Positions 842-37,636 of a DNA stretch of 64,000 nucleotides are shown in pieces. The notes below the pieces were generated by a model. It was not told where the DNA came from and did not search any database. It worked only from the letters and a program-made list of their open reading frames with translations. The stretch spans positions 1 through 64,000 of the IMG/VR virus record IMGVR_UViG_3300005529_000001, one strand, 5' to 3'. Made by a program: the position numbers and the translations under genes. Position 1 is the first letter of the stretch. Each line of letters opens with the position of its first letter.

Positions 842-902
842 CGCTTTCACCTACGCCCCCTCCGGGTCATACCCAGCGGGGGTTTGGGAGTGGTTACTTG
901 CG
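842..902 (-). ncRNA. AGUA/GAA module copy B
   Basis: CGC-A-AGUA-ACC...GGU-GAA-A-GCG; inner CCCCC/GGGGG stem. Confidence 0.65.
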
Positions 903-975
903 GAGCGGGCAACGGGATTCGAACCCGTGACACCCTGCTTGGAAGGCAGGAACTCTACCGCTGAGTTATGCCCGC
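902..975 (-). tRNA. trnG: tRNA-Gly(TCC)
   Basis: CCTGC-CTTCCAA-GCAGG. Confidence 0.95.
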
Positions 976-993
976 ATGTCTTTAACTATCTTA

Positions 994-1869
994 CTACGCA
1001 GCTACGTCTCCGTTCAACTTGGTGCTCAGAGCCTGGTAACGTACCAGGATGTCGGTCTGGTCTTCCAGCACCGCTCGTTGGTGTGAGAAAGCGAAGTGAC
1101 AAACCACTGCATCTCCAACGATCCACAGCGGTTTCAATAACTGTTCTGGGATCCGAGTCGTCAGTTCCACTTCGTCACGGGGGCCCACCTGACCGCCAAA
1201 CCTCTTGAATGATTCTCCGGTCCATGCCATCGTACCGATGCGTTGCCGGCCGGTGATGTAGTGAGAATCAAAATAGAGATCCTCGACGTGGTTGGTCTCA
1301 GCAAGCTCAAGAAAGCGCTTGTGGATGTGTGCTGCAAACTCGCCGTTGGTGCACGCGATTGGGCACCGTGGGTCACCAGTCGAGTGACCGAGATCGACGT
1401 CTAGGGTCCCCCTGTCCTGTTGCAGCTTTGACGTGTATGGGATGTTGAAGACATTACCAACGCAAGCGTAGTTGTGAGGCTCCCGATCGATGACAGCCCC
1501 GAACATGTTCTGGAAGAACTCATCATGCACGTAACAGATGTCATCATCGATCTTGCAATACAACGTGTTGGGTTCGATGCAATCAGAGTAGAACCTGTAG
1601 ATCGAGTCGTTGAACTGGTAGTGGTTACGTTTGGCGTCGTACAGGGCTTTGTTCAGCTGCCCCTTCGGCATCGATCGCTTGACCTTTGGGAATGTCTGTT
1701 CCATTCTCGCGAAGTACTCGAGGTCGCTCTCCACGTCGGTGTTGACCCACAACCTGACCTCATCAATGATGCCAGCATGACGGTCAGCCAAGAGGTACGG
1801 GAGCAACACCCTGAGGTACCGGTAACGGCCCGAAGGCACGCAAATGACGACCTTTCGTCCTTGGAACAT
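994..1869 (-). CDS. GT-A fold glycosyltransferase-like protein
   Basis: N-terminal VVICVPSGR strand, KIDDDIC DxD motif. Confidence 0.6.
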   Translation of the reverse strand: MFQGRKVVICVPSGRYRYLRVLLPYLLADRHAGIIDEVRLWVNTDVESDLEYFARMEQTFPKVKRSMPKGQLNKALYDAKRNHYQFNDSIYRFYSDCIEPNTLYCKIDDDICYVHDEFFQNMFGAVIDREPHNYACVGNVFNIPYTSKLQQDRGTLDVDLGHSTGDPRCPIACTNGEFAAHIHKRFLELAETNHVEDLYFDSHYITGRQRIGTMAWTGESFKRFGGQVGPRDEVELTTRIPEQLLKPLWIVGDAVVCHFAFSHQRAVLEDQTDILVRYQALSTKLNGDVAA

Positions 1870-1880
1870 GCCAGATTATA

Positions 1881-1950
1881 CCACGTTCACCTATGGCGGC
1901 CAGTGTCGTTATCTGTTAGCTGGTGCACGCTTACGACTGGTTACTCGTGG
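1881..1950 (-). ncRNA. AGUA/GAA module copy C
   Basis: CCACG-AGUA-ACC...GGU-GAA-CGUGG; the CCA is that of tRNA-Gly(GCC). Confidence 0.75.
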
Positions 1951-2022
1951 AGCGGATGACGGGGCTCGAACCCGTGACATTGTGCTTGGCAAGCACACAT
2001 TCTACCACTGAATTACATCCGC
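1948..2022 (-). tRNA. trnG: tRNA-Gly(GCC)
   Basis: GTGC-TTGCCAA-GCAC, CCA encoded. Confidence 0.95.
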
Positions 2023-2044
2023 AATGATCGTAACTATACAACAC

Positions 2045-2134
2045 GGAGGAAGCGAAGGGATTCGAACCCTTGGGAGCCCAAGGGGCTCCACCAGCTTTCC
2101 AAGCTGGCCGTTTCAACCTCTCACGCACGCTTCC
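2045..2134 (-). tRNA. trnS: tRNA-Ser(GGA)
   Basis: long variable arm, CCAGC-TTGGAAA-GCTGG. Confidence 0.95.
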
Positions 2135-2137
2135 ATG

Positions 2138-2335
2138 TCACAGTTGTCTTGCTAGCTCATACTGCTCCTGTCGCAGGAGCTCAATCGCCGCATCGCCGAC
2201 GAAACACAAGCTGTTTTTGTTATCTTCAGCTTCGCGGATCATCTCCTTGATGTGTTTAGCACGCTCAAGAAGACGTTCCCTGGTAGTTGGATTGCGGCCC
2301 CCGAACACGTCTGTTTTCAAGCACATCAGGCACAT
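2138..2335 (-). CDS. hypothetical protein
   Basis: ORF filling gap between tRNA and upstream gene. Confidence 0.5.
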   Translation of the reverse strand: MCLMCLKTDVFGGRNPTTRERLLERAKHIKEMIREAEDNKNSLCFVGDAAIELLRQEQYELARQL

Positions 2336-2350
2336 GTTGTAACTTACCGT

Positions 2351-2878
2351 TCAGTTGGAGCTGTGTTTCTTTGACTTGACTGGTGGTTTGGGACGGAGCG
2401 TGTTCCACAACGCTTCTTGGTCTTCGTACGAGTCATGGACCATGCGCACGAAGTCTTCAGCTCGTGACATCGGCAGGATGAGAAAGGTTCCCTTGGGCAA
2501 ACGATTTTTGTTGGGTCGACCCGGGTACCGAGTCTGGCCTGGTTGCAATCCATCTTCAGCGTGGGAACCAACGTACGAAGCGAGCGACAACGTTGGGTGC
2601 TTGCTGTTTCGTAACTCAGCGCCCATGTCCTCAAGATCATCACCAAAGCCGCCCAAGTCGTAGTCAGATACATCAAAGGCGTACTTTTCATCACTTTCGG
2701 GATCGAATCCCGGGAGAAACGATCCGTCATCAGGACCAAAATCTGAGGGTTCACCGCAACGAGCGCATTGCTCACCGTGTATCCCGCTGGTTTTCTGGTC
2801 AAAACCACACCGACCACATGACCAGGTCGCAACAGCCTCCTGAACCAAACGGCGAAGCATTGCAAGACGGATCCGCAT
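2351..2878 (-). CDS. hypothetical protein with MRIRLAMLRRLVQEA N-terminus and Zn ribbon
   Basis: start trimmed downstream of tRNA; CxxC...CxxC. Confidence 0.6.
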   Translation of the reverse strand: MRIRLAMLRRLVQEAVATWSCGRCGFDQKTSGIHGEQCARCGEPSDFGPDDGSFLPGFDPESDEKYAFDVSDYDLGGFGDDLEDMGAELRNSKHPTLSLASYVGSHAEDGLQPGQTRYPGRPNKNRLPKGTFLILPMSRAEDFVRMVHDSYEDQEALWNTLRPKPPVKSKKHSSN

Positions 2879-2889
2879 CGCAGTAACTA

Positions 2890-2983
2890 TGGAGGAAGGG
2901 AGGGGATTCGAACCCCTGGGAGCCCTCACGGGCCCCTCTCGCTTTCGAGGCGAGCGCCTTAAGCCAGACTCAGCCACCCTTCC
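2890..2983 (-). tRNA. trnS: tRNA-Ser(CGA)
   Basis: CTCGC-CTCGAAA-GCGAG, long variable arm. Confidence 0.95.
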
Positions 2984-2989
2984 AGTCGT

Positions 2990-3250
2990 TCAAATGCAAG
3001 ACTGTTTGCGATTCGATGCCCAACCCATGTCAACCGCATACGCATCCCGCGTCATCTTCAACGATTGTTTGGCAGTGAGCCAGTGATGTGGGTACACCGT
3101 GAAGTGGGTGATGTGACCGCACGCTGGACACTCGTGTTCGTACTCTCCGGGTTGGAACACCATCATTGATGGCGGCAGGTGTTCACGAGATTGGCACGGG
3201 TGAAAACGCTTGTCACAGGGGTCGATGTCTCTGATCTTTCGTGTGGGCAT
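2990..3250 (-). CDS. small Zn-ribbon protein
   Basis: HECPACGH motif. Confidence 0.55.
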   Translation of the reverse strand: MPTRKIRDIDPCDKRFHPCQSREHLPPSMMVFQPGEYEHECPACGHITHFTVYPHHWLTAKQSLKMTRDAYAVDMGWASNRKQSCI

Positions 3251-3284
3251 TGTTTTTCTTTTGTTGTAGACCCATTGGGTCGTT

Positions 3285-3375
3285 AGAGGAGGGTGAGGGA
3301 TTCGAACCCCCGGGACCCCTTTCGAGGTCCTTCCGCTTTCAAGGCGGCTGCCTTAGGCCACTCAGCCAACCCTCC
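3285..3375 (-). tRNA. trnS: tRNA-Ser(TGA)
   Basis: CCGC-CTTGAAA-GCGG, long variable arm. Confidence 0.95.
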
Positions 3376-3383
3376 ACGTGAGA

Positions 3384-3590
3384 CTACTTTCGTTTCCCCT
3401 TCTTGGTCTTTGCAGATTGTTCTTGGTACATGTCTGGATGTTCTTGCGCGGTGTGTTCGTGATAGCAGTGGACGCACACCGTCGCCGGGCACTTGAGACA
3501 CAGCCACATCTCAGACGAGTCATTGGCGGGCCCGCGCTGGGGTGCGCTGACCTGGACGACCTTTTCACCGCAGTTAGGACAGGGGATCAT
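3384..3590 (-). CDS. Zn-finger hypothetical protein
   Basis: CPNC, CLKC, CVHCYHEH. Confidence 0.6.
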   Translation of the reverse strand: MIPCPNCGEKVVQVSAPQRGPANDSSEMWLCLKCPATVCVHCYHEHTAQEHPDMYQEQSAKTKKGKRK

Positions 3591-4006
3591 CGTTTCTTAT
3601 GACCGAACGTGGGCGTCTGAGAATGACAATTAGGGCACAACAAGCGCAAGTTCTCGAGGAGATGATTCGATGGTTGACCATCACGGTGATCGAGTTGAAG
3701 CGTGATAGGCAAACCGTTCCAGTCAACAATCCCACACCCTTCGCACTTGTACTCCTTCAACCCTTCCTTGACGAGTCGTTTCGCAAGTTTATGTGTAGGG
3801 TAGCCAGGGTGTTTTCCAGCGAGAATTTCTTGAAGAGGAATTTTGAGTCGGAAACCACCGTTCGTTCTTTGATAAACGCCGAAGTCTCGAGCTCGACGTT
3901 CGAAAATTCCCTGACTGACACCACTACGCATCGCTGCTTCGCGAACGTTGTTGCTGGTATTGAGCAGATGTTCAATCTGTTCTTTCGTAAGACCGTCATC
4001 AACCAT
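3587..4006 (-). CDS. HNH endonuclease (HTH-like N-terminus plus HNH)
   Basis: CEGC...LQLDHRDG...NLRLLCPNCHSQT; ATG at 3' end of tRNA-Ser(GCT). Confidence 0.85.
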   Translation of the reverse strand: MVDDGLTKEQIEHLLNTSNNVREAAMRSGVSQGIFERRARDFGVYQRTNGGFRLKIPLQEILAGKHPGYPTHKLAKRLVKEGLKEYKCEGCGIVDWNGLPITLQLDHRDGQPSNHLLENLRLLCPNCHSQTPTFGHKKR

Positions 4007-4098
4007 GGGAGGAAGCGGAGGGATTCGAACCCTCGGGAGCCCTTCCGGGCCCCACTCGGTTAGCAACCGAGCGCCTTAAGCCTCTCGACCACGCTTCC
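4007..4098 (-). tRNA. trnS: tRNA-Ser(GCT)
   Basis: CTCGG-TTGCTAA-CCGAG. Confidence 0.95.
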
Positions 4099-4112
4099 AA
4101 TTTGCAGATATT

Positions 4113-4187
4113 AGTCGGCGCAGCGTGATTTGAACACGCGACATCCCGCTTGTAGGGCGGGCGCTTCTACCCCTGAGCTATGCGCCG
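4113..4187 (-). tRNA. trnV: tRNA-Val(TAC)
   Basis: CCCGC-CCTACAA-GCGGG (C33). Confidence 0.85.
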
Positions 4188-4196
4188 TCGCTGCTC

Positions 4197-4586
4197 TCAG
4201 AGCAGCGGTAAGTGTCCGGTGATCTTGTCGAGCTCTTCGACCTTGCACGGGCCGAAAGCAGCGCAGGTCAGGGTGGGGACACCATGGAACTCTGTCTTAC
4301 CGGCATCGATGATCGGGTGGACTTCGATGTCAGCTAGCTCTGCTCTGAAGATGAGGTCACGCAGTTCCTCTTCGCTGCCACAGCGGACGACAGCCTTGGT
4401 GAACGACCCGGACAGGAGCCACTGAGCCTCTTCAAGCGAGAGCTTGACAACGATCTCATCGCCACGCTCGCTTTCGTTGTTGTCAACGAGGAACTTCATT
4501 GCGGCGTGAGCACCTTGGGCGATCATCTTGCCCTTACGCATGTTCAGATCGGTGCGTACAACGATGACTTGCTTCACGTCGCTCAT
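4197..4586 (-). CDS. pth2: peptidyl-tRNA hydrolase, Pth2 type
   Basis: KQVIVVRTDLNMRKGKMIAQGAHA...DAGKTEF...T...GP...ITGHLPLL. Confidence 0.92.
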   Translation of the reverse strand: MSDVKQVIVVRTDLNMRKGKMIAQGAHAAMKFLVDNNESERGDEIVVKLSLEEAQWLLSGSFTKAVVRCGSEEELRDLIFRAELADIEVHPIIDAGKTEFHGVPTLTCAAFGPCKVEELDKITGHLPLL

Positions 4587-4627
4587 AGCTACCTCCAGGT
4601 TTTCAAAGAACGCCACGTCCGAAGACG

Positions 4628-4702
4628 TGGTGACCCGTGTTGGATTCGAACCAACGACCACCTGCTTGTCGAGCAGGTGCGCTACCGCTGCGCCAACGGG
4701 CC
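4628..4702 (-). tRNA. trnV: tRNA-Val(GAC)
   Basis: CCTGC-TCGACAA-GCAGG (C33). Confidence 0.9.
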
Positions 4703-4751
4703 TTGAAGAAGGTGTGTCCAGGTTCATGGTACACCTTCAAGTAAGTATCGA

Positions 4752-5147
4752 TCAGGTCTGGCGACTGTCTGCACCCGGGCGTTTCGAGCGTTCCTCTGCC
4801 CGACGGTCCTTGGCCTTCAGGCGCCCACCTGTCACCGTTTCGGGCGCTTCCGTGACCTGAACCGGGGTTGCATCCTTCGAAGCTTCCCTGGCTTTTCTGG
4901 TGGGCTTGGAGGGGTTGTCGATCAGGTCCTGGAGCCGAGCGCGTTGGGCCTTAGCCCCGACGCCCTTGCCCAGCCGCGAATCGAGCGCAGCAAGCTGAGC
5001 CTTCGGGCTCAGGGCTGACCACACCCCCTGTCGCTCCTTGGCTTCCTTGCGCCGGAGCTCGATGTTGGCCGGGTTGTGGCGTCGCCCGCCGACGCCCGGG
5101 TAACGTCGCTTCGAGTTGTCCTTCTTGCCTGACTTCGTGCTTTCCAT
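4752..5147 (-). CDS. basic hypothetical protein
   Basis: ATG-started ORF, K/R rich. Confidence 0.6.
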   Translation of the reverse strand: MESTKSGKKDNSKRRYPGVGGRRHNPANIELRRKEAKERQGVWSALSPKAQLAALDSRLGKGVGAKAQRARLQDLIDNPSKPTRKAREASKDATPVQVTEAPETVTGGRLKAKDRRAEERSKRPGADSRQT

Positions 5148-5150
5148 GTG

Positions 5151-5351
5151 TTACCTTCCGTATGTTGGGTCCTGGTGATCGAGATCGCGAGGGTTTCTTG
5201 CGGGAGGGCTTGGGCACACAGGGGCGACGTAGACGTACTTGTCTTCGACCTCGTGCGTGCATGGGTCACGTCGAGGCGTCTTGGGGATGTCCCACTCGCC
5301 AACGCAACCCACCAACGACGCCAACAACACGGCCCAAACGAGCGTCCGCAT
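5151..5351 (-). CDS. putative lipoprotein
   Basis: MRTLVWAVLLASLVGC lipobox; TACGAT 6 nt before ATG. Confidence 0.6.
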   Translation of the reverse strand: MRTLVWAVLLASLVGCVGEWDIPKTPRRDPCTHEVEDKYVYVAPVCPSPPARNPRDLDHQDPTYGR

Positions 5352-5387
5352 GGTGGAATCGTACCACTGCAACATCACGCTTTCACT

Positions 5388-5464
5388 TGTACCCCCGACA
5401 GGATTCGAACCTGTATGTTTCCGCTTAGAAGGCGGATGCCTAAGTCCGTTCGCGCCACGGGGGC
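5388..5464 (-). tRNA. trnR: tRNA-Arg(TCT)
   Basis: TCCGC-CTTCTAA-GCGGA. Confidence 0.92.
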
Positions 5465-5468
5465 ATTT

Positions 5469-5595
5469 CACACGTTCACCTACAGTCCATCGCGGGAATT
5501 GCACCCGCACCCCCTGGATTTCAGCCAAGTGTGCTACTGTTACTACCAGACGGCTCAGAGACCCGCTCCGTTAGGAGCTTTGGGTTACTGGTGTG
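5469..5595 (-). ncRNA. AGUA/GAA module copy D carrying a CCA-less tRNA-Phe(GAA)-like body (5484-5555)
   Basis: CACAC-C-AGUA-ACC...GGU-GAA-C-GUGUG; inner CTTGG-CTGAAAT-CCAGG and T-arm GCGGG-TGCAATT-CCCGC. Confidence 0.75.
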
Positions 5596-5669
5596 GTCTC
5601 ACCGGCGAGAGTCGAACTCGCGGCTTTCACCTTCGGAGGGTGACACTCTGTCCACTGAGTTACGGTGAG
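5594..5669 (-). tRNA. trnR: tRNA-Arg(CCG)
   Basis: TCACC-CTCCGAA-GGTGA. Confidence 0.92.
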
Positions 5670-5674
5670 ATGTC

Positions 5675-5758
5675 GGGATCTTTCAACTGTTGCCGGACTC
5701 GCACCGGTTGAGCGACTCTTTGATGCGCCTCGTCTTAGTTGATCGTTTACTGGATCCC
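5675..5758 (-). ncRNA. AGUA/GAA module copy P (AAC/GUU variant)
   Basis: GGGAUC-C-AGUA-AAC...GUU-GAA-A-GAUCCC; T-arm-like CCGG-TGCGAGT-CCGG. Confidence 0.7.
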
Positions 5759-5762
5759 TGTT

Positions 5763-5839
5763 TGGTCTCCGAGGAGGGATTCGAACCCCCGACGTCCGCC
5801 TTAGGAGTGCGGCATTCTGTCCAGCTGAATTACTCGGAG
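5763..5839 (-). tRNA. trnR: tRNA-Arg(CCT)
   Basis: loop CTCCTAA, A.G mismatch at 31-39. Confidence 0.85.
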
Positions 5840-5915
5840 AGTTTTGCCGGATCATCGCCCGGTCGCTTACTCTTAATGTTGTGACCTCTTGTGGAATGGA
5901 TCAACACGTTACCAA

Positions 5916-6000
5916 CATCGCATTTCACATTCACCTATGTGGGTACAAACCACTGCGACGGGCGAACCCGCCATCGGACTTCAGTTGTTACTTGGCGATG
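5916..6000 (-). ncRNA. AGUA/GAA module copy E (ACA/UGU variant)
   Basis: CAUCGC-CA-AGUA-ACA...UGU-GAA-AU-GCGAUG; inner UUCG hairpin; overlaps stop codon of upstream CDS. Confidence 0.65.
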
Positions 6001-6659
6001 TCTTTGATGAAGCGAGGGTAGTGCTCGTCATGGACGGCTTTCAGCTTCGCTTGCAAGTCTTGGAACCTACCCTCAAATGGTTCCAATTTCTCGCTCTTTT
6101 CGAAGATCTTGCCGCCTTCAGTCAGGTATGCTTGGACCTCATCGTAGAAAGTCTTCTCAGTGTAACCCTTAGCGAACAGGACCTCACGCATCAGGTCCAA
6201 CAACTCCGGGTCCGTCATGTGGATGATACCCAGGCACCGGTCGCGGTAGCTGTGGTCAAGGTAGAACATCGCATGTGTCATCTCGTGGACATCAAGCACC
6301 CCATCATCCATGACACCGATCAGATATGCTTCACGAGTCTCCATCTTGATGAGACGGTAGATCGCATACATCAGCTGGTCATACTGGTTTGGGTCCTCTA
6401 GGCCCATGTCAAACACCTGTTTGATGACCTCGACCGGGATGTTGAAACCGCCCCAATCACCCGAGGCATAGCTGAAGTGCCCGTCTTCGCCTTGTTCTTT
6501 TGAGTACCACGTCATGAACTCAGCGATCGTGAACTTCTTGTCATGGTACCGTGGGCTCTCGTAGAACTCCTGGTAGCGCAAGAAAGTCATGCACATCTGG
6601 AACGAGTCGTTGAAACGTAGCTCGTAAACTCCTTCGCGAAGCTTGCTGAATTTGAACAT
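5988..6659 (-). CDS. hypothetical phage protein
   Basis: long ORF; start trimmed to MFKFSK. Confidence 0.7.
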   Translation of the reverse strand: MFKFSKLREGVYELRFNDSFQMCMTFLRYQEFYESPRYHDKKFTIAEFMTWYSKEQGEDGHFSYASGDWGGFNIPVEVIKQVFDMGLEDPNQYDQLMYAIYRLIKMETREAYLIGVMDDGVLDVHEMTHAMFYLDHSYRDRCLGIIHMTDPELLDLMREVLFAKGYTEKTFYDEVQAYLTEGGKIFEKSEKLEPFEGRFQDLQAKLKAVHDEHYPRFIKDIAK

Positions 6660-6669
6660 GGTTGTAGGT

Positions 6670-6784
6670 GATTGACGTTCACCTCTTCGGAGTTTCACCG
6701 ACTTCGCGTACTCACCCAGCCTTAAAAGCGACCGAGCTTTCGACTGCCGATCCCGGCGAGTTTATGTTGGTTACTCTGTCAATC
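6670..6784 (-). ncRNA. AGUA/GAA module copy F
   Basis: GAUUGAC-AG-AGUA-ACC...GGU-GAA-C-GUCAAUC; inner ACUCGCC/GGGUGAGU and TCGG-TGAAACT-CCGA. Confidence 0.75.
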
Positions 6785-6868
6785 GTACCGACGAAGGGAT
6801 TCGAACCCCCACGCCCTTGCGGGCACTGCGACCTGAACGCAGCGTGTCTACCGTTCCACCACGTCGGC
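6783..6868 (-). tRNA. trnL: tRNA-Leu(CAG)
   Basis: CTGCG-TTCAGGT-CGCAG, long variable arm. Confidence 0.93.
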
Positions 6869-6883
6869 GTGGCTACACTCTAC

Positions 6884-7312
6884 TTAACCCTCTTCTCGTT
6901 TGCACTCATCACGGACCTCCATGAGGATGCGTCCGAGCCAGTTCGAACCCTTCCCGCGGCAAACGCCCCAGAACGTGTCATTCCACCAGTTGCCCTCAAC
7001 GAGCTTTGCATCACCCGTTGCCAGCAACATCGCTCGGAATAACGGGTTCTTGAACTTCTCCTGGACGAGCTGGCGCATCAGAGCGACTTTTGTCGATTCC
7101 CAATCACGGGGGAGCGAAGCTGCCTTGCCTAATTTCTTAGCTTCTCCAGGCGTCTTGGCGTTCCTAACCAGCTCGTGCCCACTGCCTTCTTTGCCAAACT
7201 TGAAAGCTTGGTATGCGTGTTCGACTGACGGGTAACGTAGACCGTTGACCCAGATCGATGACTCGTGGAAGTTGCTCAAGAAACCGAAGTCACCCCTGAA
7301 GGAGTCAATCAC
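6884..7312 (-). CDS. NADAR family protein
   Basis: FLSNF...YPSVEHAYQAFK...LVEGNWWNDTFWG...GSNWLGRILMEVR. Confidence 0.9.
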   Translation of the reverse strand: MIDSFRGDFGFLSNFHESSIWVNGLRYPSVEHAYQAFKFGKEGSGHELVRNAKTPGEAKKLGKAASLPRDWESTKVALMRQLVQEKFKNPLFRAMLLATGDAKLVEGNWWNDTFWGVCRGKGSNWLGRILMEVRDECKREEG

Positions 7313-7982
7313 CGTCTCCGAGATCAAAGTCTCTGATGTCCGCGGGAGGGTCGGGAGCTGGGGTTGCTGATGGTCCACCTTCGTTGATGCTTCGTTTGAT
7401 GGCAGCGATGAGTTCTTCGGTTTGTCGTTGTTGCTCACGTTCGTCCTCCGGGATGATGTGATTGATCGCGTAATAGAAGAGTGAACTGAAACCGGGAGCG
7501 TACTCTTCGAGCTCCGCTTCGAAGTAATTGCAACGCTTCAGAGCAGCTGCGGCTTCACGTGGGTTGCCCAAGTCAAACCTGACCAATGCAGGTTGGCATC
7601 GCTTGATAACTCGCCAGTATGCCGCGGCAGCATCATCAAACGCGTAAAACGCGCGGTACCAGTGCTTGTCACCCTTGTTGAAGTAGGTGGGTTGGTCTAC
7701 AGATGTCGGCCCAACGTTGCCCAAGTTGTGGTTGTATGATGCTCGCCCAGCTGCGTTCTCAAACGCTACCTGACCCCAGGCCATCGCAAGACGGTTCTTG
7801 CTGGGGTAGCTGCCAAAAACTTTCAGGTGACCGTCACGCAACGCTTGCAGCAGCTCCAGTTGAGTTAGTGGCGTCTTCACCGTTTCTACGTGTTCTCGCT
7901 TGGGTGGCTCCGCTTGTGCAGATCCGAGAGTGCAGCTGAACACAACAGTGATCAACGCGAAGAGCTTCTTCGCCCGGGACAT
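7305..7982 (-). CDS. secreted glucosaminidase/lysozyme-like (GH73-like) protein
   Basis: signal peptide; QVAFEN...NHNLGNV...YRAF...Y pattern. Confidence 0.5.
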   Translation of the reverse strand: MSRAKKLFALITVVFSCTLGSAQAEPPKREHVETVKTPLTQLELLQALRDGHLKVFGSYPSKNRLAMAWGQVAFENAAGRASYNHNLGNVGPTSVDQPTYFNKGDKHWYRAFYAFDDAAAAYWRVIKRCQPALVRFDLGNPREAAAALKRCNYFEAELEEYAPGFSSLFYYAINHIIPEDEREQQRQTEELIAAIKRSINEGGPSATPAPDPPADIRDFDLGDGD

Positions 7983-7999
7983 TGACTCAATCTACTAAG

Positions 8000-8572
8000 T
8001 CAGTCCCGCGTTGTTTCGTCACTTTCACCTGTACATTGTCCTGCAAGCGGGCACGCCGGTAGTTCACAGGTTCCCGTGTTTGGAGAATTGATGTCATCAG
8101 ATGAGGTACACAGCTTCCAAGGCAGCCCAGCCTTGACAACGCGTTTGAGCATGTCAGCAGTCCCACGTGATTCAGCGATGTTGTTGTGAAACGCTAGGAC
8201 CAGATCAATGGGCTCTTCAGGCTTGTTTTCTTCATCAAGCATCTGTTGGTTCCTGATCGGACCCGCTGCACGCTTGTGTTTGGTCCAGTCAGCTGGGTAT
8301 GGCCTGACTTCAAACATGAGTGCTTCAGCAACAGCGGCACAGATGATGTCAGCGCCGACACATGCACCGTGCACGAGGATGGTTCCAGGCCTGAAGCCTT
8401 TCAGCTCTTCAACGACACGGGTGATGTCATTCCAGTTCCTGTCACCAGTGACCAAGATCTTACGAACCTGTTTCTCTGACGGCAGCTTGCGACGTTCTTC
8501 GTCATCACGACGGTCATGGTAACGTCTGTCAGGCTTGTTACGCCTGATCTCGCCAGTCCTTTGCCGAGCCAT
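8000..8572 (-). CDS. SLOG-superfamily (DUF2493-like) protein
   Basis: ILVTGDR...LVHGACVGAD...YPADW...AAGPIRNQQML. Confidence 0.8.
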   Translation of the reverse strand: MARQRTGEIRRNKPDRRYHDRRDDEERRKLPSEKQVRKILVTGDRNWNDITRVVEELKGFRPGTILVHGACVGADIICAAVAEALMFEVRPYPADWTKHKRAAGPIRNQQMLDEENKPEEPIDLVLAFHNNIAESRGTADMLKRVVKAGLPWKLCTSSDDINSPNTGTCELPACPLAGQCTGESDETTRD

Positions 8573-8925
8573 CAGTGGGTTGTCACTGCGTAATGTTCGT
8601 CATGCTGACTGACGTTTTGGACGAGAAGCGTTAGCGTCTCGTTAACCTGAGGCGTGTAAGTCAAGTCACAACCGTCTTTGTTTGACGTGTCACGTTTGAT
8701 GAACTTACCGATCGCCATCCCCTCTTCCTTGCCGTGATAGAGGTAACAGTCCAAGTCACCCCCGTTACCCACGACACGGATGCTTGTCTGGATGTGCGCC
8801 GTGGCTGGGACCTCAACACGGGACAACAGTCCGGGCTTGAGGGTGCCCTCGTAAAAACCGTCTCCCGCAAGTGAAGTCGTGGCTGCCAAAAGAATCGCAG
8901 CCACGACACCTACTACGTGCTTCAT
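8572..8925 (-). CDS. secreted PPC-like beta-sandwich protein
   Basis: signal peptide; GNGGDLDCYLY motif. Confidence 0.55.
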   Translation of the reverse strand: MKHVVGVVAAILLAATTSLAGDGFYEGTLKPGLLSRVEVPATAHIQTSIRVVGNGGDLDCYLYHGKEEGMAIGKFIKRDTSNKDGCDLTYTPQVNETLTLLVQNVSQHDEHYAVTTH

Positions 8926-8928
8926 CGA

Positions 8929-9519
8929 TCACTCCCAGTCACCATTGTACCACCTAGACAGCCTGCTTTTCACGCCCGTTCGGTGATCAGTGACCTGGTC
9001 ATCTTGGGTGCGATACGTGCGAACCTTGTCGCCACGTTGGCCCGTGCCAACTTGCTGTTTACGATCAGTTTCTTTGGCGGTTCGTAATCGCTCTCTGTCA
9101 GCTTCATAGAGTCGAGCTGCAAGGACTTTCATCGCCATCGCTTTGTTTTGGCTTTGGCTTCGTTCATTGTCGATACGAACTTGTAACCCAGTCAACTTGT
9201 GAGTGACAACAACGCAGCTCTCGGTCTTGTTACGTTTCTGGCCACCCGGACCAGATCCGCGGACAGTCTCGATGAGAACGTCCTGGTACGTCAGGGGTTG
9301 GCCACTGACAAAATCAGGATCAAAGACAGCAACGGTTACCGTTGACGTCTGGACCCGACCACGTTTTTCAGTGGGTGGGATCCGTTGCCACCGGTGACCG
9401 CCGCTCTCGTTACAGAACGTCTGTTTGGCTCCTGCACCAGTGAAAGCGGCGATGACCAAACCTGGACGTTCGTCGATTAGTTCGATTTCAAAGACACCTC
9501 CGTGCTGCCACATTGGCAT
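8929..9519 (-). CDS. peptide chain release factor-like protein (RF1-type, N-terminally truncated)
   Basis: ESGGHRWQRIPPTEKRGRVQTST (PxT), GPGGQKRNKT (GGQ), RSQSQNK, RTY. Confidence 0.9.
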   Translation of the reverse strand: MPMWQHGGVFEIELIDERPGLVIAAFTGAGAKQTFCNESGGHRWQRIPPTEKRGRVQTSTVTVAVFDPDFVSGQPLTYQDVLIETVRGSGPGGQKRNKTESCVVVTHKLTGLQVRIDNERSQSQNKAMAMKVLAARLYEADRERLRTAKETDRKQQVGTGQRGDKVRTYRTQDDQVTDHRTGVKSRLSRWYNGDWE

Positions 9520-9566
9520 ACACAGAGAGTTGCTCTTTCACGAGCAGCTTTGCGTCATCGCCGCCC

Positions 9567-10073
9567 TCAGCGGCTCTGATCTCGAGGATGACCGTCTCCA
9601 TTGTCTGTCTCCCCAGCGACCGCTCCGAAGTGCTCGTCCAGGATCATCCTGTAGACACGCCGGTTGAGACCGCTGTGTTGTTTGAAAAACTCGTTATCGT
9701 CTCCCGCGAAGATCTTGAGCAATGCGCTCGCGACGCCGGGAGACCTGCTCAGGCCTGCATCACAGTGAATGATGATCCGGCTTGCGATGGGGTGAGCCGC
9801 AACAAAAGCGAGGATCGCTTTCGCGTGGTGCGGCTGGAACATCAATCGCTCGACGTCTTCTCTGACAACACGTTCAGGTTGTGTTCCACCAACCCGAGTG
9901 TCCCAGACACGATCGATGTCGTAGAACTGGAGCTGCAAGACGCCCAAGGTGTTGCTGTTGGTCGGGAGCCTAGCGGGTCCGTCTTCTTTGGGGGTGCTGA
10001 TTGAGATGAAAACGTGCGGAACCTTGTGTTCCACGGTCTCTGCAAGCTGTCTGTTATAAACGATGACGTCCAT
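9567..10073 (-). CDS. Cys-based (tyrosine/dual-specificity) phosphatase-like protein
   Basis: HCDAGLSRS CX5R loop; FYDID acid loop. Confidence 0.8.
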   Translation of the reverse strand: MDVIVYNRQLAETVEHKVPHVFISISTPKEDGPARLPTNSNTLGVLQLQFYDIDRVWDTRVGGTQPERVVREDVERLMFQPHHAKAILAFVAAHPIASRIIIHCDAGLSRSPGVASALLKIFAGDDNEFFKQHSGLNRRVYRMILDEHFGAVAGETDNGDGHPRDQSR

Positions 10074-10112
10074 GAGACATCCTACCCCTCAGGCGATGTT
10101 GAATTCACTCTG

Positions 10113-10190
10113 CGGTACCGGGAGTGGGACTCGAACCCACGGTGTGTCGGCTTATGAGACCGATGCTGTTGCCACTGAAGCCACCCCGGC
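10113..10190 (-). tRNA. tRNA-CAT (elongator Met or Ile2)
   Basis: TCGGT-CTCATAA-GCCGA. Confidence 0.85.
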
Positions 10191-10193
10191 GTA

Positions 10194-10279
10194 CCCAACG
10201 AGTTTTCACTTTCTCACTACCCGGTACTCCCGCCGGGTTCGCAGCTGCCGCTACCTGCGGCAAGTTACTGTTCGCTGGG
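10194..10279 (-). ncRNA. AGUA/GAA module copy O (ACUU/AAGU variant)
   Basis: CCCAGCGA-AC-AGUA-ACUU...AAGU-GAA-AAC-UCGUUGGG; two inner hairpins. Confidence 0.75.
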
Positions 10280-10353
10280 TGCTGACGGCGGGAGTCGAAC
10301 CCGCAGAACCCTGCTTCTAAGGCAGGTATGTATGCCTGTTCCATCACGTCAGC
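10277..10353 (-). tRNA. trnL: tRNA-Leu(TAG), short variable arm
   Basis: CCTGC-CTTAGAA-GCAGG; 5-nt variable region. Confidence 0.8.
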
Positions 10354-10358
10354 ATTGA

Positions 10359-10436
10359 GAGTGCCCCCGGCCCGATTCGAACGGGCGACCCGCTGCTTCG
10401 AAGGCAGCCGCTCTGAATCCGCTGAGCTACGGGGGC
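10359..10436 (-). tRNA. trnR: tRNA-Arg(TCG)
   Basis: GCTGC-CTTCGAA-GCAGC. Confidence 0.92.
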
Positions 10437-10475
10437 ATATTTCCATTTCGTGCAAGACTATGGTATGGTGGCGTC

Positions 10476-10985: not shown

Positions 10986-10994
10986 AACTTGGTG

Positions 10995-11025
10995 GGGGCC
11001 CAGAGAGATCATCCCTGGGCCCCCG
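10995..11025. terminator. GC-rich hairpin between convergent units
   Basis: GGGGCCCAG...CTGGGCCCC inverted repeat. Confidence 0.55.
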
Positions 11026-11029
11026 TCGA

Positions 11030-11384
11030 GGGAGGAGGGCCGATAAGCCGGGTTCTGTCGTTGGGCGATCATTCCTCTGGGATGCATGTTGCCATGCACC
11101 TCAAGCAGCAACCCGGGAACATCGGGCGAGCAGCCCTCAACCGTTCCCTGTTTGCCTTGCTGCGGATGGGGTTTGCCACAAGGGACTGTCACCAGCCCTG
11201 TCGGGGTCTCTTACACCTCGGTTTCGCCCTTGCCTGATCGAGGGGTTGTTTCCCCAAGCCATCGGCGGTCTGTTTTCTGTTGCACTGTTCCGTCGCGTCG
11301 CCGCGCCTGGCCGTTAGCCAGCATCCTGCTCTGTGCAGCCCGGACTTTCCTCTGCATGAATGCAGCGATTCGCCTGGCCTTCCC
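11030..11384 (-). ncRNA. rnpB: RNase P RNA, type A
   Basis: GAGGAAAGTCCGGGC, AGTGCAACAGAAA, ACAGAACCCGGCTTATCGGCC hallmark segments. Confidence 0.97.
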
Positions 11385-35611: not shown

Positions 35612-35685
35612 TGGTTGGGGCGGAGGGATTCGAACCCCCGTAAGCTGATTCAAAGTCAGCGGTCCTGCCGTTGGACGACACCCCA
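35612..35685 (-). tRNA. trnQ: tRNA-Gln(TTG)
   Basis: GCTGA-CTTTGAA-TCAGC. Confidence 0.93.
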
Positions 35686-35713
35686 ATAGAGAGTAACAAG
35701 CTGCGTTCCGTGT

Positions 35714-35785
35714 TGGTTGCTCCGACTGGACTCGAACCAGTGGCCCCCGCTCCATGGTAACGGGTGTCCGCCGATATGCGGAGCA
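35714..35785 (-). tRNA. atypical tRNA-like RNA, reduced D arm, CAT centred in loop
   Basis: 7-bp acceptor plus ACCA, canonical T arm, CCCGTT-ACCATGG-AGCGGG. Confidence 0.55.
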
Positions 35786-35787
35786 AT

Positions 35788-35883
35788 GCGTCATGTCGAA
35801 CGGAATCGAACCGTTGCCCGGGTAGCAGCCGCGAGCCTTCACAGGATTCTGTGTTTTTCCCAGTGCTTTCCTCGAACGACATG
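35788..35883 (-). ncRNA. tRNA-like RNA with 4-nt anticodon loop
   Basis: CATGTCG/CGACATG acceptor, CACAG-AATC-CTGTG, T arm AACGG-TTCGATT-CCGTT. Confidence 0.55.
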
Positions 35884-35886
35884 ACT

Positions 35887-35961
35887 TGGCAGGGGCGCAG
35901 GGACTCGAACCCTGGTAGCGAGTTTTGGAGGCTCGCGTCCTAGCCGCTGAACGACACCCCT
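35887..35961 (-). tRNA. trnW: tRNA-Trp(CCA)
   Basis: loop CTCCAAA, G73, C.A mismatch at 31-39. Confidence 0.85.
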
Positions 35962-36053
35962 GTAAAAAGCGCTGGTACATGGGACAACTTGCGTTGATCA
36001 GACGTATTGGTTGTTAGTCAGTCTTCCGACAACACTCACCATGTTTGCCAGCT

Positions 36054-36130
36054 ACGGCACCGTCGACGGGAATCGAACCCGCATTTCCTGGTAGACAGCC
36101 AAGCGACCTAATCCATTGATCGACGACGGT
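36054..36130 (-). tRNA. trnD: tRNA-Asp(GTC)
   Basis: CTTGG-CTGTCTA-CCAGG (U37). Confidence 0.85.
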
Positions 36131-36213
36131 ATTGTATCGCTGTGAGAAGCTACCAACTCCTCGCGAGGCGGTGGGGCTCCCTTGCGCTGGGCGCCCATGT
36201 TACCTTGCAGCGA

Positions 36214-36287
36214 TGGCGGTCCCGAGGAGAATCGAACTCCCGTAATACGCTAGACAGGCGTACGTCCTACCACTGAACGACGAGACC
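36214..36287 (-). tRNA. trnD: tRNA-Asp(GTC), second copy
   Basis: TACGC-CTGTCTA-GCGTA (U37), GCCA. Confidence 0.88.
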
Positions 36288-36375
36288 ATTGGCTCCTCGT
36301 TTACCTCGGCGCTTGCCGCGCGTTCTGGTGTACAGACCATGTTGGCATGGTATCGGACCTGGACTTGTTCCGGAG

Positions 36376-36447
36376 TGGAGCTCACGGGATTTGAACCCGT
36401 AACTTCCAGCTTGCAAAGCTGGCACTCTCCCGTTGAGTTAGAGCCCC
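36376..36447 (-). tRNA. trnA: tRNA-Ala(TGC)
   Basis: G3:U70, CCAGC-TTTGCAA-GCTGG. Confidence 0.92.
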
Positions 36448-36448
36448 G

Positions 36449-36530
36449 TGGAGCAGGAGGGGATCGGACCCTCAATCACGCAGCCTCCGCTGGCGAGCGG
36501 CCTTACCGAGTGACCATCCATTGCTGCCCC
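36449..36530 (-). ncRNA. Ala-acceptor tRNA-like RNA with aberrant anticodon arm
   Basis: GGGGCAG/CTGCTCC-A (G3:U70); CCGCT-CGCC-AGCGG. Confidence 0.55.
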
Positions 36531-36609
36531 GTTGCAGCGTCGGTGGGTTACGTAGCAAATTGCATTCTATAGACGAGGAACTTCAATGATAGAATTGCCA
36601 CCGAGCCTA

Positions 36610-36652
36610 GCACTTCACCTTCTTGTCGGTCCTCTGCGACTGGTTACCGTGC
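36610..36652 (-). ncRNA. AGUA/GAA module copy J (minimal, GGUA variant)
   Basis: GCAC-GGUA-ACC...GUCG/CGAC...GGU-GAA-GUGC. Confidence 0.6.
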
Positions 36653-36654
36653 AG

Positions 36655-36727
36655 TGGAGCACGCGGGACTCGAACCCGCCACCTCAACGTTGCGAACGTT
36701 GCGCTCTCCCAGATGAGCTAGTGCCCC
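36655..36727 (-). tRNA. trnA: tRNA-Ala(CGC)
   Basis: CAACG-TTCGCAA-CGTTG. Confidence 0.92.
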
Positions 36728-36780
36728 GAAAACTCCGGCATGGTGACTGCTCTCGCAGACGATCCCGGAGGGATTATGGT

Positions 36781-36856
36781 TGGCAGCGGGGGATGGAGTT
36801 GGACCACCATTTCCAAGCCTTAGACGCCTGGCGACTTGCTGTTAGTCGACCCCGCT
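36781..36856 (-). tRNA. atypical tRNA with CUA (amber) anticodon, 6-bp anticodon stem
   Basis: CCAGGC-GTCTAAG-GCTTGG; G73-CCA; D loop lacks GG; T loop TCCAACT. Confidence 0.55.
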
Positions 36857-36857
36857 G

Positions 36858-36930
36858 TGGAGCTAGCGGGATTCGAACCCGCCACCTTCTGCATGCCATG
36901 CAGACGCTCTCCCAAATGAGCTATAGCCCC
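36858..36930 (-). tRNA. trnA: tRNA-Ala(GGC)
   Basis: TCTGC-ATGGCAT-GCAGA. Confidence 0.92.
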
Positions 36931-37055
36931 GTGTGCCGGCGGTTACTCTGAGTCTTCACCTTCAGGTTTGCAGCAAAGCACGATGAAACACGCACGCTGT
37001 GTGAATGCATATCGTAGTTGGTCGCTGGTCCTCCTATCCGCGCCGGCGGATCGGA

Positions 37056-37131
37056 TGGTGATCCTGGTGGGACTCGAACCCACGAGTTTCTGCGAGTCAT
37101 GCAGACGATCTGGCCGCTGATCTACAGGATC
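37056..37131 (-). tRNA. trnV: tRNA-Val(GAC), second copy
   Basis: TCTGC-ATGACTC-GCAGA (U37). Confidence 0.85.
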
Positions 37132-37371
37132 GTGGCCGGTCTCTCCCGGCGGTCATAGCGGACGATGTGGTCCGCACGTTTTGTCTTTACCTTTCCTTCC
37201 GCTTGTTGCGGTACTGCCGTCGCCAACAGGGCCGGCACATGTATGCCATCCCCGCGAGCTGTGCAGCGATTTGACACCACTTACACATTCCGCGCCTCCT
37301 TTCGTATGAACGAAAGTGGCTACGGAGGTCTTGAATGATCCATGCAGTGACACCTCTTGTTTGGCAAGGTT

Positions 37372-37449
37372 TGGTTGCGGACACCAGGAGTCGAACCTAG
37401 CTGTTGCTGGGTTATGGGCCCAGCGTGTAAGCCGTTTCACTCGTCCGCA
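37372..37449 (-). tRNA. initiator-like tRNA-fMet(CAT)
   Basis: three G-C pairs CTGGG-CCCATAA-CCCAG; U1:A72; ACCA. Confidence 0.75.
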
Positions 37450-37523
37450 GTGGGTCCGGAGGGCAATGATCCCACACGCTTCCGGTTAAAAGCCGGCTGC
37501 TCTGCCAATTGAGCTACGGACCC
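37449..37523 (-). tRNA. trnK: tRNA-Lys(TTT), atypical T loop
   Basis: CCGG-CTTTTAA-CCGG; T loop ATCATTG. Confidence 0.8.
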
Positions 37524-37529
37524 GTATTA

Positions 37530-37636
37530 CATCGTTCACCTGCCAGGATTCGAACCTCCATGTCCGGCTTGAAAGGCCAGCATCCTACCATTAGATGACG
37601 AGACCTTGCGATCTCGGGGTAAGTGGTTACTTGATG
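37530..37636 (-). ncRNA. AGUA/GAA module copy L carrying a tRNA-Glu(TTC)-like body without 3' acceptor strand
   Basis: CAUC-A-AGUA-ACC...GGU-GAA-C-GAUG; CTGGC-CTTTCAA-GCCGG; GGTTCGAATCC; GCAA hairpin. Confidence 0.75.

What the first reader, a model, noticed from the sequence alone, without database searches (positions are those of the whole stretch)
842..37636. tRNA 3' trailers pair with the next leader starting at positions 74-76, sequestering the CCA site
Seen: the spacer's terminal helix starts at tRNA position 74, 75 or 76 in modules B, C (CCACG/CGUGG), D, F, G, I, L and O. The same holds in motif-less spacers: after His at 12266-12341 (CAUGUG/CACAUG), at 14026-14142, at 14220-14530 and after Asp at 36138-36214 (AUCGCUG/CAGCGAU). 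Many tRNAs lack encoded CCA (CCG, CGA, CCC, CUC and others). Inference: a deliberate processing grammar in which an RNase Z-like cut after N73/C74 and an RNase P cut at the next tRNA free each spacer as a stable RNA with paired ends, and CCA is rebuilt afterwards. The phage Rnl2-like ligase could even circularise them.
Basis: partly seen in the sequence, partly recalled or inferred. Interest (0 to 1): 0.7.

Follow-up and report, generated by a model that had tools for sequence, protein, structure and literature searches.

The report
Self-closing RNA cassettes between phage tRNAs
In this giant soil phage's 56-gene tRNA array, most non-coding gaps are folded RNA cassettes whose closing helix starts one or two bases after the upstream tRNA and ends 3-6 bases before the next, a larger version of the phage T4 tRNA-cluster layout that probably lets tRNA-processing enzymes cut out stable small RNAs.

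Summary
Among 32 spacers of 40 nt or more, helices of at least 5 bp that start at tRNA position 74-76 and end 3-7 nt before the next tRNA number 8, against 1.5 expected from cross-pairing spacer ends. No other geometry is enriched. The same enrichment appears in three related phage contigs (9 vs 2.5) and in unrelated phage tRNA arrays (17 vs 5.7).

The spacers are discrete cassettes of three kinds:
- the phage's own RNase P RNA;
- about 13 tRNA-like RNAs clamped by an invariant AGUAACC/GGUGAA (loop-E-like) motif plus a covarying helix P1;
- other hairpins and structured RNAs.

Position 74 is C in all 58 tRNAs. CCA is encoded in only 26. The commonest direct tRNA-tRNA junction is a single C. 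The phage encodes RNase P RNA and a CCA-adding enzyme, but no RNase Z or RnpA was found.

Best reading: tRNA punctuation of the phage T4 kind (dimeric precursors, rnaC/rnaD). Cuts at tRNA ends would release cassettes with paired ends, and CCA would then be completed. No RNA data exist, so which enzyme makes the upstream cut is undecided. Sequestration of CCA is only partial, because C74 is usually left free. Circularisation has no support.

The parts
765..15179 (-). tRNA array 1: 35 tRNAs, RNase P RNA, cassettes and a few small ORFs
35612..39338 (-). tRNA array 2: 20 ARAGORN tRNAs plus one found only by Rfam at 37713-37781
11028..11385 (-). Class A RNase P RNA. It starts 3-4 nt after N73 of tRNA-Leu(cag) and has the L15 GGGU. 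In relative L002 it fills a whole inter-tRNA spacer.
838..903 (-). Loop-E module Gly(tcc)>Gly(ccc): P1 CGC/GCG from position 75, overhang AAAC. The L003 orthologue has CAAC/GUUG.
1877..1950 (-). Loop-E module after Gly(gcc): P1 CCACG/CGUGG from position 74, followed by an ORF
5465..5596 (-). Loop-E tRNA-like module Arg(ccg)>Arg(tct): P1 CACAC/GUGUG from 75. The core scores 28.6 bits against Rfam tRNA.
6668..6785 (-). Loop-E module after Leu(cag): 7-bp closing helix GAUUGAC/GUCAAUC from 75, followed by an ORF
10191..10278 (-). Module Leu(tag)>Met: closing helix CCAGCGA/UCGUUGG from 74, overhang GUAC. Conserved in L001, absent in L002.
12668..12766 (-). Loop-E tRNA-like module Leu(taa)>Thr(tgt): P1 AUCC/GGGU from 76
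12927..13037 (-). Loop-E tRNA-like module Thr(ggt)>Gly(gcc): weak P1. The core scores 19.7 bits against Rfam tRNA.
13111..13236 (-). Loop-E tRNA-like module Cys>Thr(ggt): P1 CUUC/GAAG from 76
36606..36654 (-). Short module after Ala(cgc): GCAC/GUGC around GGUAACC...GGUGAA
37524..37637 (-). Loop-E tRNA-like module Ile(aat)>Lys(ttt): P1 CAUC/GAUG from 75. The core scores 26.9 bits against Rfam tRNA. The G002 orthologue has GUUGC/GCAAC.
37803..37883 (-). Loop-E module after Arg(gcg): two-part closing helix starting at 76
38366..38502 (-). Loop-E module after Lys(ctt): 7-bp closing helix from 75 and a T-arm-like hairpin, followed by a PD-(D/E)XK endonuclease ORF
675..766 (-). Last module, after Gly(ccc): motif present, terminal helix weak
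12266..12342 (-). Motif-less cassette His>Glu: 6 bp from 75, overhang CAC. Replaced by 3-5 nt in L001 and L002.
14023..14143 (-). Cassette Pro(cgg)>Thr(cgt): 8 bp from 75, with two T-arm-like hairpins. Replaced by 4-10 nt in relatives.
14216..14531 (-). 316-nt structured RNA Pro(ggg)>Pro(cgg): 12-bp closing helix from 75, 90% identical in L002, no Rfam match
36131..36216 (-). Cassette Asp>Asp: 7 bp from 76, overhang ACAAU
38779..38842 (-). Cassette Asn>Asn: 7 bp from 75, overhang CCAU. Same helix in G002.
36288..36375 (-). Cassette Ala(tgc)>Asp: 4 bp from 74
35962..36057 (-). Cassette Asp>Trp: closing helix from 76 in the MFE fold
38705..38705 (-). One-base (C74) junction Asn>Gln. The same junction type occurs at 37450, 36857 and 13951.
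21832..22704 (-). RNA ligase ORF (PF09414), the 'Rnl2-like ligase' of the finding. No link to the cassettes was shown.

Best explanation
The array is built on tRNA punctuation. Every structured RNA that follows a tRNA begins 1-3 nt after the discriminator, directly after an invariant C74. This holds for another tRNA, the RNase P RNA, a loop-E-clamped tRNA-like module, or a plain hairpin. Where a tRNA follows, the element ends 3-6 unpaired nt before it.

Shown: the geometry, its conservation, the covariation of the closing helices, and the presence of a phage RNase P RNA and a CCA-adding enzyme.

Inferred:
- The long minus-strand transcript is cut by RNase P at each tRNA 5' end, and by one endonucleolytic cut at the tRNA 3' end, somewhere from N73 to A76.
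- This frees each cassette as a small RNA with a flush, base-paired 5' end and a short 3' tail. Such ends resist 5'-end-dependent and 3' exonucleolytic decay.
- The upstream tRNA is left ending in N73-C74(-C75-A76), and the CCA-adding enzyme completes it.
- C74 is kept because class A RNase P pairs its L15 GGU with R73-C74-C75. Keeping C74 unpaired leaves that contact available.

The enzyme for the upstream cut is not decided. Candidates are RNase P acting on the cassette as an acceptor-stem mimic, as at the 1-nt junctions, or host RNase Z/BN, or RNase E.
For: - Enrichment only in the box 'start 74-76, overhang 3-7': window 8 vs 1.5, relatives 9 vs 2.5, unrelated phage arrays 17 vs 5.7.
- P1 covaries among 22 modules, p < 5e-5. 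Orthologues differ by full compensatory changes: CGC/GCG vs CAAC/GUUG, and CAUC/GAUG vs GUUGC/GCAAC.
- C74 is present in 58/58 tRNAs here and in 24/24, 33/33 and 15/15 in relatives.
- The commonest short junction is one C, 11 of 40.
- In L002 the RNase P RNA occupies a spacer from position 76 to 2 nt before the next tRNA.
- The strict motif occurs 9 times in 369 kb, 8 of them 6-13 nt after a tRNA N73.
- The CCA-adding-enzyme family ORF is present, and L15 GGGU is present.
- T4 shows the same layout: Gln-C-Leu, Pro-CU-Ser, and tRNA-Arg followed by 1 nt, rnaD, 6 nt and rnaC.
- From the literature: 3' RCC pairs with L15 GGU, and structure within 2 nt of the cleavage site slows RNase P (PMC10731613).
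Against: - There are no transcript data, so discrete cassette RNAs are not shown.
- About a third of non-coding spacers do not close end to end.
- CCA is encoded in 26/58 tRNAs, far above chance, and is often inside the helix. This sits badly with a universal cut after C74.
- Cassette 3' tails are A/U-rich, not RCCA-like.
- The stack from P1 to the T-arm is longer than the 12 bp that RNase P measures, so cleavage at the P1 edge by RNase P is not assured.
- The G-U versus A-C test did not prove RNA-level selection on this strand.
Confidence: 0.55

Rival explanations
1. RNase P-only punctuation. Each cassette's closing helix plus its short 3' tail mimics an acceptor stem. RNase P, using the phage RNA, would cut at the helix's 5' edge exactly as it does at tRNA-C-tRNA junctions. 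Every upstream tRNA would be left as N73-C74(-C75) for the phage CCA-adding enzyme, and no 3' nuclease would be needed.
For: - Next-element start positions are the same for tRNAs (1-nt C junctions) and for cassettes (75 is the commonest start).
- The phage has RNase P RNA and a CCA-adding enzyme but no RNase Z.
- Many modules have T-arm, D-arm and anticodon-arm-like hairpins.
- C74 is invariant.
Against: - Encoded CCA is over-represented and would be wasted.
- Tails are not RCCA.
- The helical stack to the T-loop exceeds 12 layers.
- No RnpA is encoded in the phage.
- There is no cleavage data.
Confidence: 0.25
2. The trailer-leader helix deliberately hides CCA. A host RNase Z-type cut after N73/C74 plus RNase P at the next tRNA free the spacer. 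CCA is rebuilt, and the RNA ligase may circularise the spacer.
For: - The geometry and the CCA-adding enzyme fit.
- In 9 of 13 closed spacers the upstream tRNA encodes CCA, and C75/A76 lie in the helix.
- RNase Z enzymes that act next to C-containing ends exist (PMC7479834).
Against: - C74 is usually unpaired.
- Modules in front of ORFs do not use a tRNA leader.
- No phage RNase Z was found.
- The ends are not a ligatable nick.
- There is no evidence of circles.
Confidence: 0.2
3. Passive insulation. The helices only keep spacer sequence from mispairing with tRNAs, or are leftovers of decayed tRNA genes or small inserted elements with inverted ends. Spacers are degraded, and the flush position merely reflects a compact array.
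For: - Cassettes are present or absent between close relatives at exact tRNA borders.
- Several cassettes hold T-arm-like hairpins or sub-threshold tRNA matches.
- Watson-Crick pairs alone carry most of the signal.
Against: - The AGUAACC/GGUGAA clamp is invariant while P1 covaries.
- The 316-nt cassette is 90% conserved.
- The RNase P RNA obeys the same rule.
- Overhangs do not carry the C expected at a relic position 74.
Confidence: 0.15
4. RNase E-type one-step removal. A host RNase E/G cut immediately after CCA or C74 removes the whole structured trailer, as for the E. coli proline tRNAs. The helix only marks the boundary.
For: RNase E removes a hairpin that starts right after CCA in one cut (PMC5291269). 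Leaders are A/U-rich.
Against: The host is unknown. There is little single-stranded A/U-rich sequence at the upstream junction. This model does not explain C74 when CCA is absent.
Confidence: 0.1

Closest known systems
Phage T4 tRNA cluster: dimeric precursors and small stable RNAs rnaC and rnaD (species 1 and 2)
   Same: - Small RNAs of unknown function sit in a phage tRNA cluster, co-oriented and abutting tRNAs.
- T4 has Gln-C-Leu and Pro-CU-Ser junctions, and tRNA-Arg followed by 1 nt, rnaD, 6 nt and rnaC.
- rnaC has a T-arm and paired ends (PMC3014915, PMC9697503).
   Different: - There is no sequence similarity beyond the T-arm.
- Here there are about 20 cassettes, an invariant loop-E-like clamp, C74 in every tRNA, and a phage RNase P RNA inside the array.
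- T4 lacks C74 after Ser and Ile.
tRNA punctuation and tRNA-like t-elements of mitochondria; mascRNA-type 3'-end formation
   Same: tRNA or tRNA-like structures serve as cutting marks for RNase P and RNase Z, and so define the ends of neighbouring RNAs (PMC1920247 abstract).
   Different: Those mark mRNA or long non-coding RNA ends in organelles or nuclei. Here the punctuated items are small structured RNAs in a phage array, and cleavage has not been shown.
E. coli proK/proL/proM: terminator hairpin removed by one RNase E cut just after CCA
   Same: A stable helix begins directly after the tRNA 3' end and is removed as one piece (PMC5291269).
   Different: Those are terminators at transcript ends, with CCA always encoded. 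Here the elements are internal cassettes, often without CCA.
Bacterial Y-RNA-like YrlA (tRNA-like module plus closing stem)
   Same: A tRNA-like domain is closed by a stem made of the 5' and 3' ends.
   Different: No Ro/TROVE gene is present, and there is no YrlA match in the window at E <= 10. The topology also differs: the closing stem replaces the acceptor stem, not the anticodon stem.
Sarcin-ricin / loop E (bulged-G) motif
   Same: AGUA lies opposite GAA, flanked by a helix (ACC/GGU) and a non-Watson-Crick pair.
   Different: This rests on sequence pattern only. There is no structure and no known partner.

Membership tests
T4-type small stable RNAs of phage tRNA clusters (rnaC/rnaD) | Lies within a phage tRNA gene cluster, on the same strand, abutting tRNAs | tested here: met
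T4-type small stable RNAs of phage tRNA clusters (rnaC/rnaD) | Accumulates as a discrete stable RNA | not testable with these tools
   No RNA run was listed
T4-type small stable RNAs of phage tRNA clusters (rnaC/rnaD) | Sequence homology to T4 rnaC or rnaD | tested here: not met
   blastn finds only T-arm-length matches to tRNAs
tRNA (Rfam RF00005) | Score at or above the gathering threshold (29 bits), with a canonical 7-bp acceptor stem | tested here: not met
   Module cores score 28.6, 26.9 and 19.7 bits. The acceptor stem is replaced by ACC/GGU plus AGUA/GAA plus P1.
YrlA / Y RNA | Match to the YrlA model and an Rsr (TROVE) gene in the genome | tested here: not met
   No TROVE gene. No YrlA hit in the window at E <= 10.
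tRNA-like processing signals (t-elements, mascRNA) | Cleaved by RNase P and/or RNase Z so as to define neighbouring RNA ends | not testable with these tools
   Only the geometry fits
Sarcin-ricin / loop E motif | AGUA opposite GAA between two helices | tested here: met
   Invariant in modules of the window and of L001-L003 and G002
Sarcin-ricin / loop E motif | Bulged-G S-turn three-dimensional geometry | not testable with these tools
   No structure method was applied
Bacterial class A RNase P RNA (the cassette at 11028-11385) | Full-length match over the gathering score, with the P4 core and L15 GGU | tested here: met
   267 bits, model positions 1-367, GGGU present

The most novel reading that the evidence does not exclude
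The AGUAACC/GGUGAA-clamped tRNA-like modules are a new class of phage RNA. They would act as 3'-end processing elements: placed flush after C74, they recruit RNase P carrying the phage's own RNA to cut between the tRNA and the module. tRNA maturation would then need only phage RNase P RNA plus the phage CCA-adding enzyme. The released modules would persist as stable tRNA mimics with a function of their own, such as decoys or protein sponges. An analogous AT-rich cassette family in unrelated phages would make this a general phage strategy.
Probability: 0.2. Interest if true: 0.75.

Novelty: new variant of a known kind. Interest (0 to 1): 0.55.

Why it matters
T4's rnaC and rnaD have had no known function for fifty years. 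This array offers about 20 such cassettes, with clear rules that can be tested at the bench:
- an invariant C74;
- a closing helix starting at position 75 or 76;
- a 3-6 nt leader before the next tRNA;
- a conserved loop-E-like clamp.

It also carries a phage RNase P RNA that obeys the same rules. If the rules hold, they would show how huge phages mature dozens of tRNAs independently of host 3' nucleases. They would also define a design principle for packing stable RNAs into one transcript.

Tried and rejected
- Y-RNA/YrlA idea: rejected. No TROVE gene and no model hit.
- Known Rfam family for the modules or for the 316-nt RNA: none at E <= 10.
- Homology to T4 rnaC/rnaD: none.
- G-U versus A-C asymmetry as proof of RNA-level selection: confounded by the C/A-rich ends and inconclusive.
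- Decayed-tRNA relic model: the overhangs lack the C expected at a relic position 74.
- RNase III processing stems: most helices, at 3-8 bp, are too short.
- Promoter and terminator scan of array 1: no excess over shuffles.
- RNA-seq evidence: DNA runs only (soil and mine metagenomes); no RNA run was listed.
- GenBank phages: no close relative of the window region, and none of the AT-rich cassette.
- A genome-wide strict motif hit at 274313 (+) is not near a tRNA and looks like chance.

Full report
WHAT THE WINDOW IS

The window is the first 64 kb of a 369,475-bp virus record with direct terminal repeats. It is rated complete, and its best DNA holder is a soil metagenome. All RNA genes lie on the minus strand. 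There are 55 ARAGORN tRNAs, one more found only by Rfam at 37713-37781, and a full-length class A RNase P RNA at 11028-11385 scoring 267 bits. The tRNAs form two arrays, 39338-35612 and 15179-765.

Between them lie a few translation-related ORFs and two homing-endonuclease-like ORFs:
- PTH2;
- an RF-1-domain protein;
- NADAR;
- a SLOG protein;
- a small nucleotidyltransferase;
- the two endonuclease-like ORFs (HNH at 3587-4066, PD-(D/E)XK at 37942-38418).

CHECKING THE OBSERVATION

I placed N73 of every tRNA from its acceptor pairing; Rfam's tRNA ends agree. I then took each spacer from position 74 to the base before the next tRNA.
- His>Glu: CAUGUG/CACAUG from position 75.
- Pro(cgg)>Thr: 8 bp from 75.
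- Pro(ggg)>Pro(cgg): 12 bp from 75.
- Asp>Asp: AUCGCUG/CAGCGAU from 76.
- Module after Gly(gcc): CCACG/CGUGG from 74.

The naive baseline is high. In isolated MFE folds the first paired base falls at 74-76 in 25 of 35 spacers, but also in 17.5 +/- 2.6 of dinucleotide shuffles.

The stricter control pairs each spacer's 5' end with the 3' ends of other spacers. Maximal helices of at least 5 bp that start at 74-76 and end 3-7 nt before the next tRNA number 8 against 1.5 expected; for at least 4 bp, 13 against 5.0. All 31 other start/overhang boxes sit at expectation. Permutation p is below 5e-5 for summed helix length and for duplex energy. The start position is therefore not random relative to N73, and the 3' arm also has a preferred distance from the next tRNA.

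REPLICATION

Proteins encoded inside the array led to related IMG/VR contigs (L001; L002/L007/L073/L074, which are one record, G002; L003). Their tRNA order is syntenic with the window. The same box holds 9 helices against 2.5 expected there.

Unrelated phage loci, collected only because they encode a PTH2 homologue, show 17 against 5.7. These include an AT-rich family of cassettes about 115-120 nt long. Their closing helices are 6-9 bp, covary, and start at 75 or 76. Their cores are tRNA-like (Rfam tRNA 36.3 bits over model positions 10-63).

WHAT THE SPACERS ARE

They are discrete cassettes of three kinds.

(i) The RNase P RNA. In the window it starts 3-4 nt after N73 of tRNA-Leu(cag). In L002 it fills the whole Leu(cag)>Arg(tcg) spacer, from position 76 to 2 nt before the next tRNA. 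Its own P1 is the terminal helix there.

(ii) About 13 modules built as follows: C or CC; then P1 of 3-7 bp; one non-Watson-Crick pair; AGUA opposite GAA; ACC paired with GGU; and a variable core.
- The longer cores have D-arm-, anticodon-arm- and T-arm-like hairpins and sub-threshold tRNA scores of 28.6, 26.9 and 19.7 bits. These are tRNA-like RNAs whose acceptor stem is replaced by a loop-E-like clamp.
- P1 covaries: pairing exceeds shuffled partners with p < 5e-5, with several pair types per position. Orthologues differ by fully compensatory changes, CGC/GCG vs CAAC/GUUG and CAUC/GAUG vs GUUGC/GCAAC.
- The strict motif occurs 9 times in the 369-kb genome, 8 of them 6-13 nt after a tRNA discriminator.
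- It was not seen in the unrelated loci, and nothing in Rfam matches.

(iii) Other closed hairpins and structured RNAs. One is a 316-nt RNA that is 90% identical in L002.

Cassettes come and go between relatives exactly at tRNA borders. For example, His>Glu is 77 nt here and 3-5 nt in L001 and L002, while Asn>Gln is 1 nt here and 64 nt in G002.

Three modules, at 1877-1950, 6668-6785 and 38366-38502, close on themselves and are followed by ORFs. The element therefore belongs to the upstream tRNA's 3' end, not to the next tRNA's leader.

THE tRNA 3' ENDS

Position 74 is C in all 58 tRNAs of the genome, CC occurs in 38, and CCA in 26. C74 is also universal in the relatives: 24/24, 33/33 and 15/15. 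Several unrelated phage arrays are 'C74 only' as well.

The commonest direct tRNA-tRNA junction is a single C, in 11 of 40 short junctions. At those junctions RNase P cleavage of the downstream tRNA must leave N73-C74. So the next structure starts at 75 or 76 whether it is a tRNA or a cassette.

The phage encodes a CCA-adding-enzyme family ORF (PF01743, E = 1.2e-34). Its RNase P RNA keeps the L15 GGGU, which in class A enzymes pairs with R73-C74-C75 (PMC10731613). No RnpA and no RNase Z-type metallo-beta-lactamase was found.

MECHANISM

Best supported is tRNA punctuation. RNase P would cut at each tRNA 5' end, which needs the 3-6 unpaired leader bases; a stem 2 nt from the site slows RNase P about tenfold (PMC10731613). 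One endonucleolytic cut at the upstream tRNA's 3' end would complete the release of each cassette. The cassette would have a flush paired 5' end and a short 3' tail, and the tRNA would be finished by the CCA-adding enzyme. Only the geometry, its conservation and the gene content are shown; the cuts are inferred.

The upstream enzyme is open. There are three candidates:
- RNase P acting on the cassette as an acceptor-stem mimic.
- Host RNase Z/BN (PMC7479834).
- RNase E cutting just after CCA, as for the E. coli proline tRNAs (PMC5291269).

Two points count against a universal cut after C74. Encoded CCA is over-represented, and in 9 of 13 closed spacers it lies inside the helix. One point counts against 'CCA sequestration' as the purpose: C74 is usually left unpaired. 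Circularisation by the PF09414 ligase has no support.

COMPARISON WITH KNOWN SYSTEMS

The closest system is the phage T4 tRNA cluster. It has Gln-C-Leu and Pro-CU-Ser junctions. tRNA-Arg is followed after 1 nt by rnaD and, 6 nt later, by rnaC, which has a T-arm and paired ends. The roles of both RNAs are still unknown (PMC3014915, PMC9697503). There is no sequence homology to them.

Mitochondrial tRNA punctuation and plant t-elements (PMC1920247) work in a similar way. YrlA was tested and rejected.

VERDICT

The finding is a new and much richer variant of a known kind. Four elements appear new:
- the loop-E-clamped tRNA-like module family;
- the invariant C74;
- an RNase P RNA that behaves as one of the cassettes;
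- the same geometry in unrelated phage arrays.

No RNA data could be obtained.

Noticed in passing
window 765-39338 (all tRNAs); L001, L002, L003; L010, L053, L065, L066: Position 74 is C in every tRNA of this genome (58/58) and of its relatives, although CCA is encoded in under half. Several unrelated phage arrays also keep C74 without CC or CCA.
   Followed up: partly
window 11028-11385 (-); L002 8142-8496: The phage encodes a complete class A RNase P RNA inside the tRNA array. Relatives G001 and G002 have it too. No RnpA protein gene was found in the genome.
   Followed up: partly
window 36781-36856 (-) and 8929-9519 (-): There is an amber-suppressor tRNA (anticodon CUA) at the place where relative G002 has tRNA-Trp(CCA). 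The two share the acceptor stem and G73 (about 71% identity). An RF-1-domain ORF lies in the same array. Together these hint at TAG recoding.
   Followed up: partly
genome 336639-336712 and 336718-336792 (+), outside the window: Two adjacent tRNA-like genes have eight-base anticodon loops (ARAGORN four-base anticodon UUCA), far from the main arrays and on the other strand.
   Followed up: no
window 14216-14531 (-); L002 5232-5549: A 316-nt, very stable (MFE -137.7 kcal/mol) non-coding RNA lies between two tRNA-Pro genes. It is 90% identical in a relative, has no Rfam match, and is 1165 nt at the same place in L001.
   Followed up: partly
L050, L053, L054, L057, L060, L063, L066 (e.g. L066 15622-15741): Unrelated AT-rich phage arrays hold a family of cassettes about 115-120 nt long. 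Each has a covarying closing helix from position 75 or 76, a 5' UAGURA(C), a 3' UUUUCUC, and an inner tRNA-like core with its own acceptor stem and CCA. No GenBank phage matches them.
   Followed up: partly
window 37713-37781 (-) and 35714-35807 (-): ARAGORN misses one tRNA (Rfam 58.4 bits, anticodon loop reads CUU). It also calls a 94-nt 'tRNA-???' with an odd anticodon, which may be an intron-bearing or tRNA-like gene.
   Followed up: no
window 36931-36965 (-): The clamp motif occurs once in reversed order (GGUGAA ... AGUAACC as a hairpin) at the end of the Val(gac)>Ala(ggc) spacer.
   Followed up: no
window 11963-12192, 12416-12595, 2984-3286, 13311-13643 (-): Several inter-tRNA spacers hold small ORFs (about 40-112 aa, one with a hydrophobic N-terminus) rather than folded cassettes. 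Homing-endonuclease-like ORFs (HNH at 3587-4066, PD-(D/E)XK at 37942-38418) also sit in the array.
   Followed up: no
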